Positions 16,278 through 49,592 of a DNA stretch of 64,000 bases are shown piece after piece (position 1 is the first letter of the stretch; each line of letters starts with the position of its first letter). The DNA comes from Trichosphaerium sp. ATCC 40318 (taxonomy: Eukaryota; Protista; Tubulinea). The notes under the pieces were generated by a model that saw only the letters and a list, made by a program, of their open reading frames with translations, did not search any database and had not been told where the DNA came from. Where the stretch lies: contig JALMLS010000056.1 in assembly GCA_038496445.1 (NCBI GenBank), forward strand, positions 186,001-250,000, given 5' to 3'. Position numbers and translations under genes: made by a program.

Positions 16278-16832
16278 ATGGGCGCCAGTTTAATAAATCT
16301 TCCATCAGAAATACAGCTCTATATAATTGATTTAGACTATGAAGTGTATTTACAGTGGCCTCTGTTATCAAAGTACACAGCAACGAACACAAGGTTCGAT
16401 ATAAACATGAAGAAACATGGGAAATGGGTGAAGTACATTAACACCCCGTTTTTTTCAAAACCACAAATATCAAAGCAACAATACTGGATGTACGGTAAGC
16501 GTCATGGAGAGTGTAAGTCCTGGTACGATAATGGGCAGTTGGAGAAGCAATACTATTTTGTAAATGGTATACGAGAAGGGGATTACAAGGAGTGGCATGA
16601 AAACAGTCAAGAGGCATTGCGCTGCTATTATCTCAACGGTAAACGAGATGGAGATTATAAGACCTGGGACAACTATGGTAAAGTACGTGAGTATTGTAAG
16701 TATGAAGAAGATATGGTGCATGTAGAGTACAGAACATTAGGTATCTGTTTAGTACTGAAGGAGTTCGTAAGTCCAAAAACATTTGCAAAATACACCAAAA
16801 ATCTTTCAGAATTTAATCTAACCCTGGTTTAG
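16278..16832 (+). CDS. F-box-like + MORN-variant (YwqK-type) repeat protein
   Basis: LINLPSEIQLYII F-box-like start; 24-aa repeats (GKRHGECKSWYDNGQLEKQYYFVNGIREGDYKEWHEN). A possible terminal intron 16767-16832 (GTAAGT..CTAAC..TTTAG) would change the C-terminus. Confidence 0.75.
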   Translation: MGASLINLPSEIQLYIIDLDYEVYLQWPLLSKYTATNTRFDINMKKHGKWVKYINTPFFSKPQISKQQYWMYGKRHGECKSWYDNGQLEKQYYFVNGIREGDYKEWHENSQEALRCYYLNGKRDGDYKTWDNYGKVREYCKYEEDMVHVEYRTLGICLVLKEFVSPKTFAKYTKNLSEFNLTLV

Positions 16833-22718: not shown

Positions 22719-23656
22719 ATGGAAGAGACCGTTATTAGCAGTATAACACCACCAACAAAGGTAAATGATTGTATACAAGTGAGATCTTGTGTTAACGCTT
22801 GAAATAGGTTGAGACTTTCAATGGTTGCTTCCTGTTACGCCTGCCACTGGAGTTACAACTTGAAATTATTGATTTAGACTTTGATGTCTACATAAAATGG
22901 CCAATACTATCATTATACACGGCAAGAACAACAAGATTTGATAGCAAATTGAGAAAACAGGGCAAATGGTTAAGGCGAAGGCAAAGCCCTAGAAAGAAAC
23001 TTACCATCGTGCGTCAGCAGTACTGGAACCATGGTAAACGCCATGGAGAGAATAAACGGTGGTACAGAAATGGTAAATTAGAAGCGCACACTTCGACTAT
23101 CAATTACAAAGCTGAAGGTGAGCACAAAAGATGGTATAAAAACGGGCAAATATCGTATCAAGTGACTTATGTCAATGATAAATATGATGGAGAGTACAAG
23201 GGATGGCACGAGAATGGGCTACAAAGAGTGCAAAGAAATTATGTTAATGGTATACAAGAAGGAAGCTTCATATCCTGGTACAGGGATGGTACAATACGCG
23301 AACAAAGTACTTACAAAAAAGGTTCTCGTGAAGGTGAGCACAAGCGGTGGTTTGAAAATGGTCAGATGTGGTACCAGCAGAATTATGTGGATGGTAAGTT
23401 TGAAGGTGAGCACAAAAGATGGCATAGAAACGGACAAATAATGTTACAACAGACTTATGTCAATGGTAAACTTCACGGAGAATATAAGAAGTGGCATCAA
23501 AGCGGACAACAAACAGAGCATAGTCATTATATTAATGGTAAAATGGAAGGAGACCATAAGGTATGGCATCGTTTTGGCGACTTGATATTGCACTGTTTTT
23601 ATGTCAATGGTAAAAGAACATCAATAATGTACATGCATGAAAGCATACAAGAATGA
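22719..23656 (+). CDS. F-box-like + MORN-variant repeat protein, paralog of the 16278 gene
   Basis: One intron (~22761-22807). LLRLPLELQLEIIDLDFDVYIKWPILSLYT matches the 16278 N-terminus; about 8 repeats of GxxEGEHKRWYxNGQ. Confidence 0.85.
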
Positions 23657-37151: not shown

Positions 37152-37764
37152 TTTTTCGGCTCTTTCCTTAAAAATATGTTTTTAGCTCTTCATTCCAGGA
37201 TGATTTATAAAATGTTTTGTTTGTATACTAGAACCTACTACTAATAAATAAGCGCTTGTGTTGTTTTCATAAAAAACAATGTCTGAGCACTCACATTATT
37301 TAAACGAAATAGATTTTGTTCTCTCGCCAAACGCAACGCGTGCACAAGTACGCACTGTTTTCGATTTCTTTTTCGCTGGAATGATATTCGGTAATACGTG
37401 TAGAGGGCCTAATAAAGTCCTGTTGTGTACGCGGTAGTAGGCTTTACAGACATTTGGATATAGCATAAGGCAAATATGGAATCGCCTAATTGGTCAGGGT
37501 AAAAGAAAGAAGTAGTTCCAAAACTGCTATCGTTGTTTGTATGGTACATACTAGAGCACACGTACACGTAATTTGAAACAATGCGACACAAAAGTAAAAG
37601 CCTGAATAAAAGGTTGGATTCGCGAGTTTATAGCACAACAAACTTACGGTATCTACAGCTAAACAAGGAGAAACAATATTCCTTTTTTGTACACTTATAC
37701 CGTAAATGCTCCTTTTAACAAAAATACACCTAAACCACCACACGAGCTGAACACACCCCACAAA

Positions 37765-39521
37765 ATGTCAGCACAGCATATCCTATGCTTAATCGCAGTA
37801 CTAGTCTGCGTACACAATGTTGTAGGCCACTCGTACATTTACAGCAGCCCAAGGCCTATCACCTATAAACCGGGAAGTGCAGGAGGTTGCAGAGTAGACA
37901 ATCCCCAAGGAACTGGAAAGAATTGCCCTGGGCCATGCGAGAATCACAAAAACCCAGACTTCAACCCTGTCACGAAGTACAAGAGAGGTGAAAGATACAT
38001 GTATGATTGGGCCAAAAACAACCACAAATACGGCTATATCAGAATTGCTATTGTACCTCTGAAATACCTCCACGATGCGTCTGCTTTTCACCAGTACACA
38101 ATCATGTACGATTGCTTCAACAATCTCCCTTCAATCAAAGCGGTCAAATGTGATAAGAACGACCCTCTTTACTTCAGATGTGACGATGATCAGGAAGGAA
38201 AAGGCATCTATTACCAATCACACTTCGTGATGCCTACGTCTATTCCTGATGGAGACTACATCTTCCAATGGACTTGGTTCGGCGGTTCTGACGACGCAGA
38301 TTACTACAGTTGTGCTATTGTCACTGTCGAAGGCGGCGCTAAACTTACTGATTCTTACCCTGTTGTTAAAAAGGTTTGCCAAACTGAATCAAGAAGAGTA
38401 GGTCAATGCAAGTATGGTCGTACTTGTAAAGATGAGAATGGTGTAGGACCATTAACAAAGAAACGTCCATTAACGACCAAACTCGATCCACGTGAATACA
38501 ACGAAAGAAACAAGCCACTCGTCCTGAGGAGCAGATACGGATCAAGCAGCCCTATGAACAACCCAATGAATAACAACCCGCCTCCAAAGAACACCAACCC
38601 ACCACCTCCAAAGAACAACAACGGAAATGGACAAACCTTCAACCACGTTGCACCTGGTTTTGTTCAAGCGCAACACTTTACGAAATTCTTCGACACAACA
38701 ACTGGAAACTCCGGTACGTTATCCCTTTTCGCTCGCTTTGCTTTTTTTTTTTATTGTTTGAATTCTATCTAACTGGTTTCCCAGGTCCTTCAGATTGTGC
38801 ACCAAACAATCAAGGCAACGCCAGGCTTGTAGATGTTCAAAAAACGTCTGACACAAAAGGTGACTGCAACATCGGTTGGGCTAGGCGAGGAGAATGGCTT
38901 GAGTATGATGTAGATTTTAAAGAGTCCGCTGAGTACAAAATCGTTCTTCGTGTTTCTGCTCCAGGCAACTCTGAAAAAAGAGTTGGTGTTTTGATAAATG
39001 GCAAAACAACCACTCTCAGATTTGATGGTACTACCCGCTACAACAATTGGAAAAATGTCGAAGCATCTCTCGGTAGAATCAACTCTGGCGTTCGCACTGT
39101 CAGAATAACTTTCCAATCAAACAGTGTAAACTTCAATTTCTTCGAATTGGTTAGCACATCCCCAACTTCGCAACCACCTCCACCACCGCCAATGAACAAC
39201 AGACCTCAACTAAGCGGAAATGCACTTGAGCTCGTAGATCCACCGATGGTTGGTAGAAGAGGTCAAACTGTCACGTTGAATGTAGCTTACTCTACAACCA
39301 CAAGCACTTCTATTAAAGTTGTTATCTTCAGAAAAACCTCAGCCAAAAATCACAACTTCAAAACTTCAAGCGACAACGTAGATGTCGAAGCTGGACAAGG
39401 CGTTATTCCTGTCACGATTGACATGCCTTCTGAGACCGGTACTGGATTCTTTTATCAAATTAAAATGGATGTCGGTAACAAAAACCTCAGAGAAGAAGTA
39501 ACTGGGCTACGTGTCAACTGA
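37765..39521 (+). CDS. Secreted LPMO-like (N-terminal His) protein with CBM6-like module and C-terminal beta domain
   Basis: Signal peptide ends VVG, then His1 (HSYIYSSPRP). NNH, IPDGDYIFQWTWFGG, DYYSCAIV. Pro/Asn linker; CBM6-like VQAQHF..DTTTGNSG..NIGW..GEWLEYDV..Y.I.LRVS. Single intron 38714-38784. Confidence 0.75.
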
Positions 39522-44260: not shown

Positions 44261-44554
44261 TTGTTCTATCCAACAACATCAAGAGCAACACCATAACAAC
44301 CTCTCAAACGAAAGATTAAAATCAATGAGCCCGAAGAAAGGGCATGAATTAATAGCTGGTTAGGACGCCGTACTAATGCTGACACGTAGAGTTTAAAATC
44401 ACGTGGGTCATAATGCTTAAAAAATACTTTGTTCTCCAAAGATCTATCAACAACAGAGGGTAGTTTTTAGTATAAATATGAACAAATTTTTTTAATGAAC
44501 AAGTGTTGTTACATTACACGTGAGATTCAGTTGATTTTTTTGTTTGGAAATTGA

Positions 44555-47500
44555 TCATTCAGAATAAGGCTTGATATCTTTAAAAACAACGACAGTACAA
44601 CTAATATTATCCGTTGAGCCTTCTTTATAAGCTTGTAGTATAAGATGCTTAGCAATTTGAGAAGGAGAATCACCTAAAAGACGTTAAAAGAACAACATAA
44701 ACAACCGTCAAAGTCAATGTGAGTCATTTTTTAGGCTTGTCGCTCAAGCTACAATATCGATGTAACTTCATAGCGATATACGCTCATTGAAAATTTCAGA
44801 AAACGCACCTGACTTTAACTTTGTCTTAACCATTTCAATGACATCGTCATTTTTCAGTGTATCCCAAAGTCCATCACAAGCAACTACCATAAACTTACTA
44901 TCTCCTCGTTTTAGATCAAAAGCCTTAATCTCTGGATCTGCTATAACGACACCAGGTTTTTCTTTTGAGTCCATATCCCCAAAGGCCCTTGCTACAGCTA
45001 GCTTTCCAAAAATTCTGCCAAATAAAATCATACCTTAACAAAACAGTCAAACTCTTTCCTTTCTCTTCTGAAAATAAATACCTCCTGCTGCTTCAACACG
45101 TTCTTTTTCTTCAGGATCAGATGCTTTATGATCTCTGGACATAACTACAGTATCACTTCCTTGACATAGAATAGCTCGACAATCACCTAAAGTAGAAAAA
45201 AACATTTAGTTTTTTTTAGCTAAAAGAACGAACATTGGCTTCGTTTGTTTGTATTCTTCCAAATAAAGGTTTTTAAATAAGTTTTTGCGTACCAGTGTTT
45301 GCAACATATACTTTGTCACCTCTTACAAGACATACAATACACGTAGAACCTACAGACTGTAGATCCATGTTTGATTTAGCTTGGGATAAAAACACTTCAT
45401 CTGTTTCAACAAATGCCTCATGTAGGGCTTTGCGTGTATCAGAATCAAGAGATGGATGTTTAGCAATATTCTTAGGTAAGAATTTTGCTAGGAAATTTGC
45501 ACATTGAATGCCAGAGTGTCCATCAAAAACTCCAAAAAGCGCCTTTTACAATCAATTAGATTGATTAATATTTGGGTTTTTTCAACTTGCCTGTTGCTCA
45601 TTGCCAGCGAATGCTAGTAAACTAGCGCTATCATCCTCCATAGCATCTCTACGACCTATTATATGTGCTTCACCATAGTCATAGTAATTATCTGAGCCTT
45701 CCATTAGCTCTGCCTTTGTATTTTCTCTGTTCATATCATTCGCTGCTCAAAAAGTAAGAAGAAACAGGTTTAAGCAAAAAGCCTCTTGGCAAGGTTGTAC
45801 AAGTTGAGTTTGCTTTTAATAAAAATCGCTACTATCACGTGACTAAAAAAGCTCATATTCGACCGTACCGATGACGCCAATGTTAACTTCGTCATCATTG
45901 TCATAATCACTACCAACCTCTCTAGGCTCTTTACGTTTTGATGTTCGTTTGATTAGAATGAGTAGAACGATTATGGCGATGATAAAGATAAGAATGATCG
46001 GGATAACTACGCCAAGCAAAATTGGAATAGTATTACTACCTAAACCAAAAAACCATTAGCTCCTATCATAACAATAACATGATAGATGATAGGTCGATTA
46101 CAACAGTCATAAACGAAAAACCTTAATGATTCCTTGTTTTTTTTGTTACTACTTAAAACTCCATCAAAACGTACTTGACGGCTCTGTACCACCATTAGCT
46201 GCAGTGAGTTGTATTGAGAATGGAACTGTTACAATTGCTCGCTTTGATATTGGAATATCTAAAGTAATAACAAAATCAATTGTTCCTGACAATTTAGCAA
46301 ACTTCGAGTTCAACTTGAAATCAACCTATTATTGCTCAGAACTTCAAAGACAACAGCAATGAATAAATTCGTTGGTACATACTTTGAAGCAAATGGCGCC
46401 ATCATAGGGTGCTGTATTTGTGCACGTGAGCGACAAATCAGTGTTTATTAGCACAGGTGAATCTACAACCAAAAAGATGTATTAGTCAGTATGTTATTAT
46501 TTTGTGGTTTCTATGTGTACCATTAGCAGTAGCATCAATAGACGATGGAAAACTAATTATGTCACTTGAGAAAGCTTTTATGTATTGAATCTACAACAAA
46601 CAAGACGAATAAGTACGTTTAAAACTAAACCAGTGACTAAGCTCTCGCTTTGTACCTTGACATATACACCAGAACTCGACGCTGAAAAGCTTGAAGGCAT
46701 GTTTATGAATTCATCACTATCGAAAATCTCTACAAGTGTTGTGTTGAACTAATCAAAAGAAAATTGATTAGCGTTGAGTACAATAATCTTCGAGCAATTA
46801 AAATGTTGCACTTGGTGGTACTTACAACCGGGGTAGATGGAGGCCTAGGGGGAGTATGAACAATAGAGTTTCACAAACACAAAACGCGGAACTACTAACC
46901 TTGTAGGTGTTACGGCTGGTGTAACACTTGCAACTGGTTGCACAGAAGGTGGTTCAGTTGTTGGCACAACTGGTGCAATAGTAGGCTCCACCGTAGGTAC
47001 AGGCTGTGTTGCTATTGCCGTGAGATTACCGTAAGGCTATACGATACGTAAATATTTATGAAATGTTAACTATACCGTACTGATGTATGACTGGATGTTG
47101 GAGCACTCACTGGTGGAGTTGAAGCAGAAATAAAAAAAACTTCATTCAAATTTGAAATAAATACAAGAGAATCTGATGAGTCAGAATACGCTAACCCTAT
47201 AGGCCACGTAAGATGTTTAACAACATTTATTTCTTGTGGTATTATTAGTATTCAAAAGGCGTACCAGTACATGATGATAACTCAGAGGTGGACCAATATT
47301 CAGTGCACCCTGATAATTTAATAAGTTAGAATAAATTAGATGATACGAGCATTACCTAGTTCGTTGCATTTATCAATAATACAGTCACCAAGCGAATCCA
47401 ACAACATGACATATACATTATCTTCATCGGCCGCTATTCCCTAAAAAAAAGGTTAATTTGTCACGTGACGAACAAATAACTTCAAAAAGAAAAAAAAATT

Positions 47501-48365
47501 CTGTTCGACCAAAATCATACTGTGATTTCACCGCCTACGTCATCATCTAATACAACTTCTTTCCTTCCTTCAGTTTTTTTACCCTTTATATACGTTCCTA
47601 TTTTATGTAATAAGAATCACAATTACGAGGTGACACGTGTAGGACGTTTTTTTTTCGATCATTTGTTTTTCTGAAAATAATGAAAAAAAAAAGACTTACC
47701 ATTGTAAGAGTAATACAGTATGTCGTCATTTGAAGCAAATGCCATAAACCGAGGATCAGGAATAGTGTCATTGTCAAAACTCTCAATATCAGAAATACCA
47801 GTCAAGGCGTTAAATTCGCCAGATTTAATTTCGTGAGATTTCGTGTCGCTCCAATAAATATCATCTAAACCATCAAATACAAAATCATAACTGTTATTTT
47901 ATGTTAGATTACTATTCACTGTATTTTGTAGTTTTTTGGTTTTTTGGGCTTTTTATGTTTCGAAACTGTCTAGAAATAGAATGCGGACCTGCTATTTAGA
48001 TGTTGTAGCGATTTAGCTACCACTGAAAGTCCTTTGATTGTAAGGTTACCTGTAACAGCCTACAAAATGTTACCGCTTATGCCACTAGGTTGTAGCGGAG
48101 GTAAATAGCGTTTACATACATCAACAAACACAAGTAACTCGTTATCATCCGAAAACGCCAGTTCCCTTGTTGGGTTGTTGTATATGATTTCGTCATTGTT
48201 TATAATAGTATACACGCCGCCGGTCGTTGAGTTTTGGTATGCCAAGTACAGCGTATCGCCGCTCACGCCTGCATGGTACATTGTAAACGTATGTACAATG
48301 TTTTACGTGCAAAACGTACGCAGCAGTATGCATAATTGCAATAAAGCAATTAGCCAACGAAACAT
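44555..48365 (-). CDS. Receptor-like PP2C/PPM Ser/Thr phosphatase (signal peptide - ectodomain - TM - PP2C)
   Basis: Exon phases checked by hand are continuous from MFRWLIALLQLCILL through TM LLGVVIPIILIFIIAIIVLLILI into PP2C: GRRDAMEDD, GVFDGHSG, GSTC, ANTGDCRA, DHK, LAVARAFGD, ACDGLWD, GSTDNIS. Confidence 0.85.
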
Positions 48366-48514
48366 GATCGTGAGCACTACTTCTTGTGCTGTAAATGTGA
48401 ATACAACGTTTTACGAGCGTGCTATAAATCAACAGTCAATTTTATTCCAAATATATTTTTATTGTTTTGTGTTTGTACATTCGATAATTTAGATCATACT
48501 TGGTCTACGGTGTT

Positions 48515-49592
48515 TTATGTTCTATTTTCTGCCTTGGCATACCAAAGTACGTCAAGATCCATGTCTCTAGGGAAGAAAAAAAACTGGAATTTGTCACAGC
48601 TCGTCCCAAGTGAATTCTCCGCCTACAAATATGTTAGTTCTCATTTTATACTATCTACCTACTGTAATGTCGGTCAATTGCTCCACTAGCTGGTCTTTGT
48701 CACCACTCAGCCCAAGAAGAATTGTTTGCTAAGTTCGACATTAGAAATAACTTTGGATTATTTTAGGTGACGCACCTCCGGTGTTTTAGTAACATTCCAT
48801 AGTATCTTACTATCTGATTCTTTTAAGAGTGATGTTGTCAATGAGTCAACATCCCCTTGTAAGTGTATCCGAGCTGCTATAGTTGACGAGCTAAACGGAC
48901 GTTCTTTTGTGATTATTTTAAAGGCAGCTGAAGCGTTCAGACTATCGGATTCATTCCAGTCCTCCGTGACCGGCGTAGCGGTAGCTTCTTTACATAATTC
49001 AGGATCCATAGTATCAATACATGCCTTAGATTACTATAAGAGAACTGCAAGAGTATTTCGTGGAGACTAATTACCTGTACTAGTTCAGCTACCTTTGACG
49101 CATCCTCTGCTTTTATTTGAACTAGAATATGCTCTCCTAGAGCACTGGTAAGAGTCTGGGAAAAGAAGTGGGAGTTGATACCTGTTGGTTGTAAATGAGG
49201 TGGTTTCTTTAATCCAACGTCAGCGCGAAGTGCCATGCCATCATAAATGTAACATAGTTTAGCCCAAGTGAGAGGACTAAAAGCCACCTACTTCACGTGT
49301 AAATAACGTTGTACAAGTGACACATAGAATAAAAACGTGCGTTAACGTTAGCACCAGGTGTATTAGCCACCGCGCGACGGAATTTAAGTACATTGTTTGT
49401 ACTTTCTACTAAGCTCCTGCCTTTCTGTAAATGGACTATATTTTGTTAGGGTTATTATGCTTAAGAAAACGCACATGTTACTAGGGAAGATGGCATGGGC
49501 TGTACAGTTGCTTCTGTAAATTGTGAATGAGCCAACTTTTAATAATTAGTTGTTTTTTATGCTACCGCCATCACGTACAAGCGTTTTACCAT
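48515..49592 (-). CDS. DyP-type peroxidase-fold protein lacking catalytic motifs
   Basis: Spliced sequence VAFSPLTW..KPPHLQP..HILVQIKAED..ELVQ..KILWN..TILLGLS..FFFFPRD is colinear with DyP motifs as recalled. No GxxDG and no proximal His segment. Confidence 0.6.

What the first reader, a model, noticed from the sequence alone, without database searches (positions are those of the whole stretch)
44555..48365. Receptor-type PP2C: a cell-surface Ser/Thr phosphatase receptor
Seen: one continuous spliced frame encodes a signal peptide, a propeller-like ectodomain (e.g. DDIYWSDT, FMAFASNDDILYYS, GIAADEDNVYV), a Pro/Thr-rich stalk, a second beta-rich domain, one TM with a basic stop-transfer (KRTSKRK), and a cytosolic PP2C with all metal-binding motifs (MED, DGH, DGLWD, DN). 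The TM exon (phase-1 donor ~45869) joins the PP2C exon (acceptor ~45743) in frame. Known: eukaryotic receptor phosphatases are classically Tyr phosphatases, while PPM/PP2C enzymes are mostly soluble or simply membrane-anchored. Inference: this may be a ligand-regulated receptor Ser/Thr phosphatase, a signalling class I do not recognise as characterised. Partnering with kinase-less LRR surface proteins such as those nearby is possible but speculative.
Basis: partly seen in the sequence, partly recalled or inferred. Interest (0 to 1): 0.85.

Follow-up and report, generated by a model that had tools for sequence, protein, structure and literature searches.

The report
Membrane-spanning PP2C phosphatase with propeller ectodomain
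An amoeba-like protist expresses one gene that joins an outside-facing, propeller-shaped binding domain through a single membrane helix to an intact inside-facing PP2C serine/threonine phosphatase, a receptor-like layout I found in no related protein and no paper searched; what it senses is unknown.

Summary
A 20-exon minus-strand gene (CDS 48365-44555) encodes 783 aa. The parts in order are a signal peptide, a ~230-aa domain with blade-like repeats, a Pro/Thr stalk, a ~130-aa beta-rich domain, one very hydrophobic TM helix followed by KRTSKRK, a 48-aa linker and a complete PP2C domain.

Spliced contigs from two independent studies confirm the introns. Both cross the critical TM-exon to PP2C-exon junction (45742/45869). 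One 1500-nt contig carries PP2C, TM, beta domain and stalk together. The "separate PP2C mRNA" refutation therefore has no support.

All conserved PP2C metal-binding and catalytic motifs are present. The ectodomain looks like a six-bladed YWTD/SGL/NHL-type propeller, on moderate evidence.

The nearest PP2C relatives are soluble proteins with N-myristoylation-type starts. None of 264 relatives screened has the signal peptide + ectodomain + TM layout. No paper in the library uses phrases such as "receptor-like", "receptor-type" or "transmembrane PP2C".

Ligand regulation and surface location are untested. No orthologue was found. The spliced protein could not be folded or searched whole because it has no reference. 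The scan had not noted this architecture elsewhere in this genome.

Verdict: a real, expressed new domain architecture of a known enzyme family, of moderate interest.

The parts
44555..48365 (-). Whole coding region: 20 exons, 783 codons plus the TGA stop at 44557-44555. The transcript extends at least to 44512 (3' UTR).
   Evidence: Gene model assembled from the RNA-contig joints gives one open frame with no internal stop.
48258..48365 (-). Signal peptide, aa 1-19 (MFR + 12-residue hydrophobic core + VSG), interrupted by a 51-nt phase-1 intron at 48269-48319.
   Evidence: The h-region WLIALLQLCILL has mean hydropathy 2.64. An in-frame stop lies upstream. The upstream gene ends near 48760 with AATAAA signals at 48463 and 48446. 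No SignalP run was possible.
47123..48257 (-). N-terminal ectodomain, aa 20-246: putative six-bladed YWTD/SGL/NHL-type beta-propeller. Blade motifs lie at aa ~19, 52, 92, 138, 180 and 223. It carries 5 N-glycosylation sequons and 4 Cys.
   Evidence: The motif gives 5 matches at 40-46 aa spacing against at most 2 in 5000 shuffles, though the pattern was chosen post hoc. PDB phmmer of exon 4 returned 17 hits, 16 of them LRP6/LDLR YWTD propellers, best E 0.002. The ten best named Atlas clusters are all six-bladed propeller families, score 0.90-0.91.
46826..47122 (-). Pro/Thr/Ser/Val-rich stalk, aa 247-312, including a 19-nt micro-exon at 46826-46844.
   Evidence: Composition is 17 P, 13 T, 10 V and 8 S in 66 residues. 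Contig lengths are consistent with the micro-exon.
46035..46748 (-). Membrane-proximal domain of unknown fold, aa 313-445, with 2 Cys and 2 N-glycosylation sequons.
   Evidence: No Pfam or PDB match on its exons. It is covered by X1 contig 1.
45951..46025 (-). Single transmembrane helix, aa 449-473, followed by the basic stop-transfer KRTSKRK.
   Evidence: Hydropathy reaches 3.77. K+R count is 0 before the helix and 6 after it.
45743..45868 (-). 126-nt GT-AG intron between the TM/juxtamembrane exon and the first PP2C exon. This is the junction in question.
   Evidence: The joint 45742/45869 appears in X1 (depth 30.5, 154 nt on the shorter side) and X2 (26 nt on the shorter side).
44558..45680 (-). 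PP2C/PPM catalytic domain, aa 522-783, spread over five exons. The intron at 45543-45590 is GC-AG.
   Evidence: Pfam PF00481. Best PDB relatives are human PPM1B and PPM1A, E 3e-11. RRDAMED, DGH, GDxR, FGD, DGLWD and DN are all conserved in alignment with relatives.

Best explanation
Shown: one spliced, expressed mRNA encodes a 783-aa type I single-pass membrane protein. The N-terminal ~450 residues carry a signal peptide, eight N-glycosylation sequons, six cysteines and a mucin-like Pro/Thr stalk. The C-terminal ~280 residues are a PPM/PP2C phosphatase domain that retains every conserved metal-binding and catalytic motif.

Inferred from the positive-inside rule and these features: the propeller-like domain, stalk and second domain face outside the cell (or the lumen). 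The PP2C is cytosolic and held within about 48 residues of the inner membrane face.

Inferred mechanism: it is an active Mn2+/Mg2+-dependent Ser/Thr phosphatase whose reach is limited to membrane-proximal phosphoproteins. What the ectodomain binds, or is sterically excluded from, decides where on the membrane the enzyme acts and how it clusters. Control would therefore work through position, not through an allosteric switch.

Its closest PP2C relatives are soluble enzymes with N-myristoylation-type MGxxxS/T starts. The simplest history is that a membrane-apposed PPM1A/B-like phosphatase exchanged a lipid anchor for a receptor-like ectodomain and TM helix.
For: Spliced contigs from two studies cover the whole CDS. 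The TM-to-PP2C junction is seen in both. One 1500-nt contig joins PP2C, TM, beta domain and stalk, and a 963-nt contig covers 46721 up to the ATG and overlaps the first across two junctions. PF00481 scores are well above the cutoff, and human PPM1A/B are the best solved relatives. All catalytic motifs are conserved. Eight of the nine sequons lie in the ectodomain. The relatives P0006, P0007, P0009, P0010, P0151, P0152, P0155 and P0156 start with MG. The two strains or samples differ by only two synonymous changes and one conservative F357V change.
Against: There is no direct evidence for surface localisation, signal-peptide cleavage, enzyme activity, any ligand or any regulation. No orthologue or paralogue was found, so conservation of the fusion is unknown. 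No single contig spans the full CDS, and the 5' end of the mRNA is not mapped, so ATG 48365 is inferred. The runs are only guessed to be RNA, a guess that rests on the contigs lacking all introns. The propeller assignment rests on one exon's weak matches plus a post hoc motif, and Pfam found nothing on ectodomain exon pieces. Contig depth is 30.5 for the 3' part and 8.9 for the 5' part in X1, which could hide an additional shorter isoform, and contigs cannot settle that.
Confidence: 0.6

Rival explanations
1. True ligand-gated receptor phosphatase. A specific extracellular ligand binds the propeller and changes PP2C activity, for instance through dimerisation, as a pSer/pThr counterpart of receptor tyrosine phosphatases.
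For: The topology matches receptor enzymes. YWTD-type propellers are protein-binding modules in LRP6 and LDLR, which were the PDB hits. The same genome is reported to hold many unusual receptor-enzyme fusions (unchecked notes).
Against: No ligand, no conservation data and no regulatory module lie between the TM helix and PP2C; the linker is only 48 aa. From general knowledge, PP2C catalytic domains are usually constitutively active monomers controlled by targeting.
Confidence: 0.25
2. Constitutively active anchored phosphatase of an internal or specialised membrane, such as phagosome, lysosome or contractile vacuole. The luminal propeller and stalk would serve sorting, adhesion or protection and would carry no signal.
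For: A signal peptide and TM helix fit any secretory-pathway membrane equally well. The LDLR-type propeller acts in endosomal cargo handling (general knowledge; PDB hits). Known membrane PP2Cs such as KAPP are simply anchored (PMC4783359).
Against: A ~450-aa, multi-domain, glycosylated ectodomain is a lot of structure for an anchor, when relatives manage with a myristoyl group. There is no localisation evidence either way.
Confidence: 0.12
3. Artefact: two adjacent genes, a surface protein and a PP2C starting at ATG 45734, joined by read-through, by chimeric contig assembly or by a rare splice.
For: An in-frame ATG (M504) lies 8 nt into the PP2C exon. The 3' contig is deeper than the 5' contig in X1. 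Contigs are assemblies, not single molecules.
Against: The 45742/45869 junction is seen in two independent studies, with canonical GT..AG ends and a preserved frame. The high-depth X1 contig itself runs from PP2C through TM and the beta domain into the stalk. No contig or loose end shows a transcript starting in the 126-nt intron (tables 6 and 7). The TM exon has no stop or poly(A) signal of its own before the donor.
Confidence: 0.03

Closest known systems
Receptor-type protein tyrosine phosphatases (e.g. CD45, LAR, PTPmu)
   Same: Type I topology: signal peptide, a modular and often mucin-like glycosylated ectodomain, one TM helix and a cytosolic phosphatase. Control is plausibly through position or clustering.
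   Different: The catalytic domain here is a metal-dependent PPM/PP2C fold specific for pSer/pThr, not a Cys-based PTP domain. There is one catalytic domain and no shared ancestry. This is an analogue, not a family member.
Mycobacterium tuberculosis PstP (bacterial membrane PP2C)
   Same: It is a PP2C-family enzyme with an intracellular catalytic domain, a juxtamembrane segment, a single TM helix and a 191-residue extracellular domain (PMC3052367).
   Different: The order is reversed: PstP has the catalytic domain N-terminal and the extracellular part C-terminal, with no signal peptide. It is bacterial, has no propeller or stalk, and is not among the nearest relatives of this PP2C.
Arabidopsis KAPP (kinase-associated protein phosphatase)
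   Same: It is a eukaryotic PP2C held at the membrane by an N-terminal hydrophobic segment, and it acts on receptor kinases (PMC4783359).
   Different: KAPP has only a signal anchor, with no ectodomain, plus a kinase-interaction (FHA) domain. This protein has a ~430-aa ectodomain after signal-peptide removal and only a 48-aa linker, with no FHA match in Pfam.
Human PPM1A/PPM1B (PP2C alpha/beta) and the MG-start protist PP2Cs P0006/P0007/P0009
   Same: These are the closest catalytic-domain relatives: PDB E 3e-11 to 1e-10 on one exon, and 47-49% identity to P0006/P0007/P0009 on the 83-aa exon. All catalytic motifs are shared. They are membrane-apposed through N-myristoylation-type starts. Myristoylation of PPM1A/B is from my own knowledge.
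   Different: They are soluble or lipid-anchored, with no signal peptide, TM helix or extracellular part.
YWTD (LDL-receptor class B) propellers of LRP6/LDLR, and SGL/NHL six-bladed propellers
   Same: The repeat motif is hydrophobic-A-x-D, then a short gap, then L/I-Y-W/F/V-S/T-D, at ~43-residue spacing. Exon 4 aligns to LRP6 blade sequences. The nearest language-model clusters carry Ldl_recept_b, SGL and NHL.
   Different: No Pfam match on exon pieces, no EGF module after the propeller, blades are short (~230 aa in total), and the first blade is degenerate. The fold has not been verified by structure prediction.

Membership tests
PPM / PP2C phosphatases (Pfam PF00481) | Significant match to the PP2C profile | tested here: met
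   Two single exons score 51.8 and 75.6 bits against a gathering cutoff of 20.3, covering profile positions 36-119 and 161-230 of 255.
PPM / PP2C phosphatases (Pfam PF00481) | Conserved metal-coordinating and catalytic residues (RxxMED, DGH, GDxR, DGxWD, DN) | tested here: met
   R531-R532-D533-A-M-E536-D537 is visible in the alignment. D558, G559, H560, G635, D636, D689, D723, G724, D766 and N767 are invariant in the alignment with seven relatives. ACDGLWD aligns to ACDGIWD of PPM1B.
PPM / PP2C phosphatases (Pfam PF00481) | Mn2+/Mg2+-dependent pSer/pThr phosphatase activity | not testable with these tools
   This needs a recombinant enzyme assay.
Receptor-type (type I transmembrane) enzyme topology | N-terminal signal peptide | tested here: inconclusive
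   The sequence is MFR, a 12-residue hydrophobic core (mean hydropathy 2.64) and VSG. The start codon is supported by an upstream in-frame stop and by the neighbouring gene's 3' end. No dedicated predictor was available and the mRNA 5' end is not mapped.
Receptor-type (type I transmembrane) enzyme topology | Single TM helix with a positive-inside flank that places the catalytic domain in the cytosol | tested here: met
   There is one hydrophobic segment, aa 449-473, with hydropathy up to 3.77. K+R count is 0 in the 15 residues before it and 6 after.
Receptor-type (type I transmembrane) enzyme topology | Ectodomain, TM helix and catalytic domain on one mRNA | tested here: met
   The junction 45742/45869 is seen in two studies. 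A 1500-nt contig spans PP2C, TM, beta domain and stalk. A 963-nt contig overlaps it and reaches the ATG.
Receptor-type (type I transmembrane) enzyme topology | Ligand binding that regulates the enzyme | not testable with these tools
   No ligand, partner or orthologue data exist.
Receptor protein tyrosine phosphatases (RPTP family) | Cys-based PTP catalytic domain (CX5R) | tested here: not met
   The cytosolic domain is PP2C, and no PTP match was found. This protein is an analogue only.
YWTD / LDLR class B six-bladed propeller | Six ~40-45-aa repeats carrying the YWTD-type motif | tested here: inconclusive
   There are five clear motif copies at 40-46 aa spacing plus a degenerate first copy. 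LRP6/LDLR hits reach E 0.002 at best, for one exon only. Other ectodomain exons gave no propeller hit. No PF00058 match was found on exon pieces. Atlas features agree at the clan level. The fold was not predicted.
KAPP-type membrane PP2C | N-terminal signal anchor directly followed by an FHA kinase-interaction domain and PP2C | tested here: not met
   About 430 residues of ectodomain precede the TM helix. The linker from TM to PP2C is 48 aa with no FHA match.
PstP-type bacterial membrane PP2C | N-terminal cytosolic PP2C, then a TM helix, then a C-terminal extracellular domain | tested here: not met
   The domain order here is the reverse, with the ectodomain N-terminal and PP2C C-terminal. The PstP layout is taken from PMC3052367.

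The most novel reading that the evidence does not exclude
This is the first example of a eukaryotic receptor-type PPM phosphatase. It would be a cell-surface protein whose propeller ectodomain binds a defined extracellular ligand or surface, and thereby switches or relocates a cytosolic Ser/Thr phosphatase. That would make it a pSer/pThr counterpart of the receptor tyrosine phosphatases, evolved independently in an amoeboid protist.
Probability: 0.25. Interest if true: 0.8.

Novelty: new variant of a known kind. Interest (0 to 1): 0.55.

Why it matters
Receptor enzymes that remove phosphate are known almost only for tyrosine. Serine/threonine phosphatases are thought to be steered by soluble partners or simple anchors. 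An expressed gene that wires a full extracellular binding module directly to an intact PP2C shows that evolution has tried the receptor Ser/Thr phosphatase solution at least once. It also gives a concrete protein on which to test whether PP2C output can be controlled from outside the cell. The apparent swap of a myristoyl anchor for a receptor ectodomain suggests a simple route by which such receptors arise. The finding is limited by being a single gene in an unidentified protist, with no orthologues and no functional data.

Tried and rejected
**Full-length analysis.** The spliced 783-aa protein has no reference, so I did not hand it to structure prediction, fold search, the search for homologous proteins or the listing of cluster members. 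Only exon references were used.

**Representative library.** The search with the 83-aa PP2C exon did not find the window's own protein or any relative above 52% identity.
- The top hit P0001 (3624 aa) is a fused gene call with FAZ1, Sec7 and two PP2C domains, not a receptor.
- P0003 is a signal-peptide protein with tandem PP2C domains and no TM helix.

**Scaffold alignment.** Alignment A1 (P0007 plus this gene's PP2C exons) misplaced the short exons and was abandoned.

**Ectodomain searches.**
- The search for homologous proteins with ectodomain exon 4 was blank. It sees only proteins of 35-110 aa, so the blank says little.
- The metagenome scan with exon 4 returned only bacterial SMP-30/gluconolactonase-type propellers that share the YWSDTKSH motif. 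They are not relatives of the gene.
- PDB searches with ectodomain exons 2 and 8 and beta-domain exon 14 gave nothing meaningful.
- The first PP2C exon alone (RRDAMED) was too short for Pfam or PDB.

**Paralogues.** tblastn of the protein against the window found none.

**Organism.** Large ORFs in the window gave only CBM6/35, MORN and coiled-coil matches, so the organism stays unidentified. Earlier notes call it amoeba-like.

**Literature.** Seven full-text searches and seven papers read by term search found no eukaryotic receptor-type PP2C. This is absence in one library, not proof.

**Linked LRR partner.** I rejected this idea as untestable here.
Full report
**What is there**

The minus strand between 48365 and 44555 carries a gene split by many short introns. 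I laid the contigs of four public runs on 44400-48500. Contigs from X1 (2015, study P1) and from X2 and X4 (2024, study P2) lack the introns, so they derive from spliced RNA, although the runs are only labelled "RNA?".

Fifteen joints were listed. After allowing the stated positional ambiguity, all have GT..AG ends except one, which is GC..AG (intron 45543-45590). Four further junctions (46748/46826, 46844/46900, 47597/47700, 48268/48320) follow from the contig lengths, the piece positions, consensus splice sites and the open frame.

Joining the 20 exons gives one open frame of 783 codons, from ATG 48365 to the TGA at 44557-44555.

**The critical junction**

The 126-nt intron 45743-45868 is removed in X1 (contig depth 30.5, 154 nt on the shorter side) and in X2 (26 nt on the shorter side). 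These are two independent studies.

- X1 contig 1 (1500 nt) runs without interruption from the 3' UTR (44512) through all five PP2C exons, the TM exon, the second extracellular domain and into the stalk (~46920).
- X2 contig 6 (963 nt) runs from 46721 to 48364. It overlaps X1 contig 1 across two junctions and stops one base short of the first base of the ATG at 48365.
- The ATG at 45734 is therefore internal (Met504).
- No contig end or loose end points to a start inside the intron.

Three caveats apply. No single contig spans everything. Contigs cannot exclude an extra shorter isoform; the 3' contig has depth 30.5 and the 5' contig 8.9. The 5' end of the mRNA is not mapped.

ATG 48365 is nevertheless well supported. 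An in-frame stop lies just upstream. The next minus-strand gene ends with its own stop near 48760 and has AATAAA signals at 48463 and 48446.

**Anatomy of the protein**

| Residues | Part | Notes |
|---|---|---|
| 1-19 | Signal peptide | MFR, a 12-residue hydrophobic core (mean hydropathy 2.64), then VSG |
| 20-246 | Repeat-containing domain | Putative propeller |
| 247-312 | Stalk | 17 Pro, 13 Thr, 10 Val and 8 Ser in 66 residues |
| 313-445 | Beta-rich domain | No detectable relatives |
| 449-473 | TM helix | The only strongly hydrophobic segment, hydropathy up to 3.8 |
| 474-521 | Linker | Starts KRTSKRK |
| 522-783 | PP2C | Five exons |

The 15 residues before the TM helix contain no Lys or Arg, and the 15 after it contain six. 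Eight of the nine N-x-S/T sequons and six cysteines lie before the helix. These features together argue for a type I orientation with the PP2C in the cytosol. This is inference from sequence rules, not a measurement.

**The phosphatase domain**

- Two single exons match Pfam PF00481 at 51.8 and 75.6 bits, against a cutoff of 20.3.
- The best solved relatives of the 74-aa exon are human PPM1B and PPM1A (E 3e-11 to 1e-10), with ACDGLWD aligned to ACDGIWD.
- In an alignment with seven relatives, every conserved catalytic or metal-binding position is present: RRDAMED (531-537), D558-G-H560, G635-D636, F-G-D689, D723-G-L-W-D and D766-N767.

I therefore expect an active enzyme, not a pseudophosphatase.

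**The ectodomain**

A motif of the form hydrophobic-A-x-[SD], a short gap, then [LI]-[YLV]-[WFV]-[SV] occurs five times, at residues 52, 92, 138, 180 and 223. The spacing is 40-46 residues. A degenerate copy lies near residue 19. Shuffled sequences gave at most two matches in 5000 trials, but the pattern was derived from the sequence itself, so this is descriptive only.

Independent support comes from two searches with the 63-aa exon 4:
- PDB phmmer returned 17 hits at E <= 10, and 16 are YWTD propellers of LRP6 or LDLR. The best has E 0.002 and aligns DFVF..IYWSD..IK..EFN.
- The ten best named ESM-Atlas clusters all carry six-bladed propeller families (Ldl_recept_b, SGL, NHL, Vgb_lyase). Scores are about 0.90-0.91 and the recognition value is low.

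A metagenome scan found only bacterial SMP-30/gluconolactonase propellers that share YWSDTKSH. Other ectodomain exons gave no propeller hits, and Pfam found nothing on exon pieces.

I conclude that a small six-bladed YWTD/SGL/NHL-type propeller is likely (about 0.7) but not proven. The membrane-proximal domain remains unassigned.

**Relatives and rarity of the layout**

A full HMMER pass of the 83-aa PP2C exon over 1.84 billion representatives found 1143 PP2C hits. Nothing was above 52% identity, so the protein itself and any close orthologue are absent from that library.

I located the PP2C domain in the best 150 with an HMM and looked for hydrophobic segments upstream. A few have only an N-terminal anchor (P0067, P0071, P0104). 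None has a signal peptide, a sizeable ectodomain and a TM helix before the PP2C.

A second search seeded with the nearest long relative (P0007, residues 1-270; candidates of 320-1017 aa) added 114 proteins. These included LRR-PP2C, Mob1-PP2C, C2-PP2C and tail-anchored forms, but again no receptor layout.

The closest relatives (P0006, P0007, P0009, P0010, P0151, P0152, P0155, P0156), mostly from protist transcriptomes, begin with MG, and most fit the MGxxxS/T consensus for N-myristoylation. The window holds no paralogue. The earlier notes of this scan that mention PP2C in this genome are other PP2C fusions and not receptor forms (unchecked).

**Literature**

The exact phrases "receptor-like PP2C", "transmembrane PP2C", "membrane-bound PP2C" and "receptor-type PP2C" had zero occurrences in all 30 papers listed from a library of about 8.4 million. 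Those papers matched only through "receptor PP2C" or "PP2C receptor", in the plant ABA co-receptor sense. Six other searches and seven papers checked by term search, covering the Entamoeba, TriTryp, trypanosomatid and Plasmodium phosphatomes, described no eukaryotic PP2C with an ectodomain.

Known membrane PP2Cs differ from this protein:
- Bacterial PstP has the reverse order: intracellular catalytic domain, TM helix, then a 191-residue extracellular domain (PMC3052367).
- Mammalian PPM1L is, from my own knowledge, anchored by an N-terminal helix without an ectodomain.

**How it most likely works**

Shown: the parts are expressed together, and the phosphatase motifs are intact.

Inferred: the ectodomain is exposed and the enzyme sits within about 48 residues of the inner membrane face. 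This geometry resembles that of its myristoylated cousins. It would confine activity to membrane-proximal phosphoproteins, for example transmembrane kinases or cortical cytoskeleton regulators.

PP2C catalytic domains are generally constitutively active and controlled by targeting (general knowledge), and there is no regulatory module in the linker. I therefore favour control by position. Ectodomain binding, clustering, or size-based exclusion of a long glycosylated ectodomain from tight contacts, as proposed for CD45, would decide where dephosphorylation happens.

A true ligand-gated switch is possible but unsupported. A purely anchoring or sorting role for the ectodomain on an internal membrane cannot be excluded. 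An assembly or read-through artefact is very unlikely given two studies and the canonical in-frame junction.

**Novelty and score**

The enzyme family, the propeller class and the type I receptor plan are all known. The combination appears undescribed and was unique among the relatives I could screen. I rate it a new variant of a known kind, with interest 0.55.

It is a clean, transcript-supported architecture that a phosphatase specialist would find notable. It is also a single gene in an unidentified protist, without orthologues, structure or function.

**Limits**

The spliced protein could not be folded or searched whole. No tool could query by domain architecture, so rarity is shown only among about 264 nearest PP2C relatives.

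Noticed in passing
window 45543-45590 (minus strand): A GC-AG intron of 48 nt (donor GCAAGT) inside the PP2C domain. Its removal is seen in the X1 contig, and a 9-nt loose end of an X2 contig matches the next exon. All other introns of the gene are GT-AG, and GTAC is a frequent donor start.
   Followed up: partly
window 46826-46844 (minus strand): A 19-nt micro-exon encoding part of the Pro/Thr stalk.
   Followed up: partly
window 48366-49290 (minus strand): The upstream gene on the same strand ends with a stop near 48760 and has AATAAA signals at 48463 and 48446. Only about 60-80 nt therefore separate its likely poly(A) site from the ATG of the phosphatase gene. This is very tight gene packing, and the product of the upstream gene has no clear Pfam match.
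   Followed up: partly
window 37687-39521 (plus strand): Two long, nearly abutting intron-free ORFs of 361 and 255 aa in an otherwise intron-rich region. The second carries a CBM6/CBM35 carbohydrate-binding module (E 2e-15), a module type common in bacterial glycoside hydrolases. This may be a laterally acquired gene.
   Followed up: no
window 16278-16829 and 22949-23653 (plus strand): ORFs with MORN_2 repeat matches (E 8e-7 and 1e-27), which suggests a small local family of MORN-repeat genes.
   Followed up: no
protein P0003 (760 aa, from the representative library): A protein with a signal-peptide-like start, an N-terminal ~165-aa region with no Pfam match and two tandem PP2C domains. It looks like a secreted double PP2C and scored among the top matches to this gene's PP2C exon.
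   Followed up: no
window 45324, 46551, 46941: The 2024 run X2 differs from the window at three coding positions: V624V, F357V and V292V. The 2015 run X1 is identical. The two studies carry different organism labels but hold near-identical sequence.
   Followed up: partly
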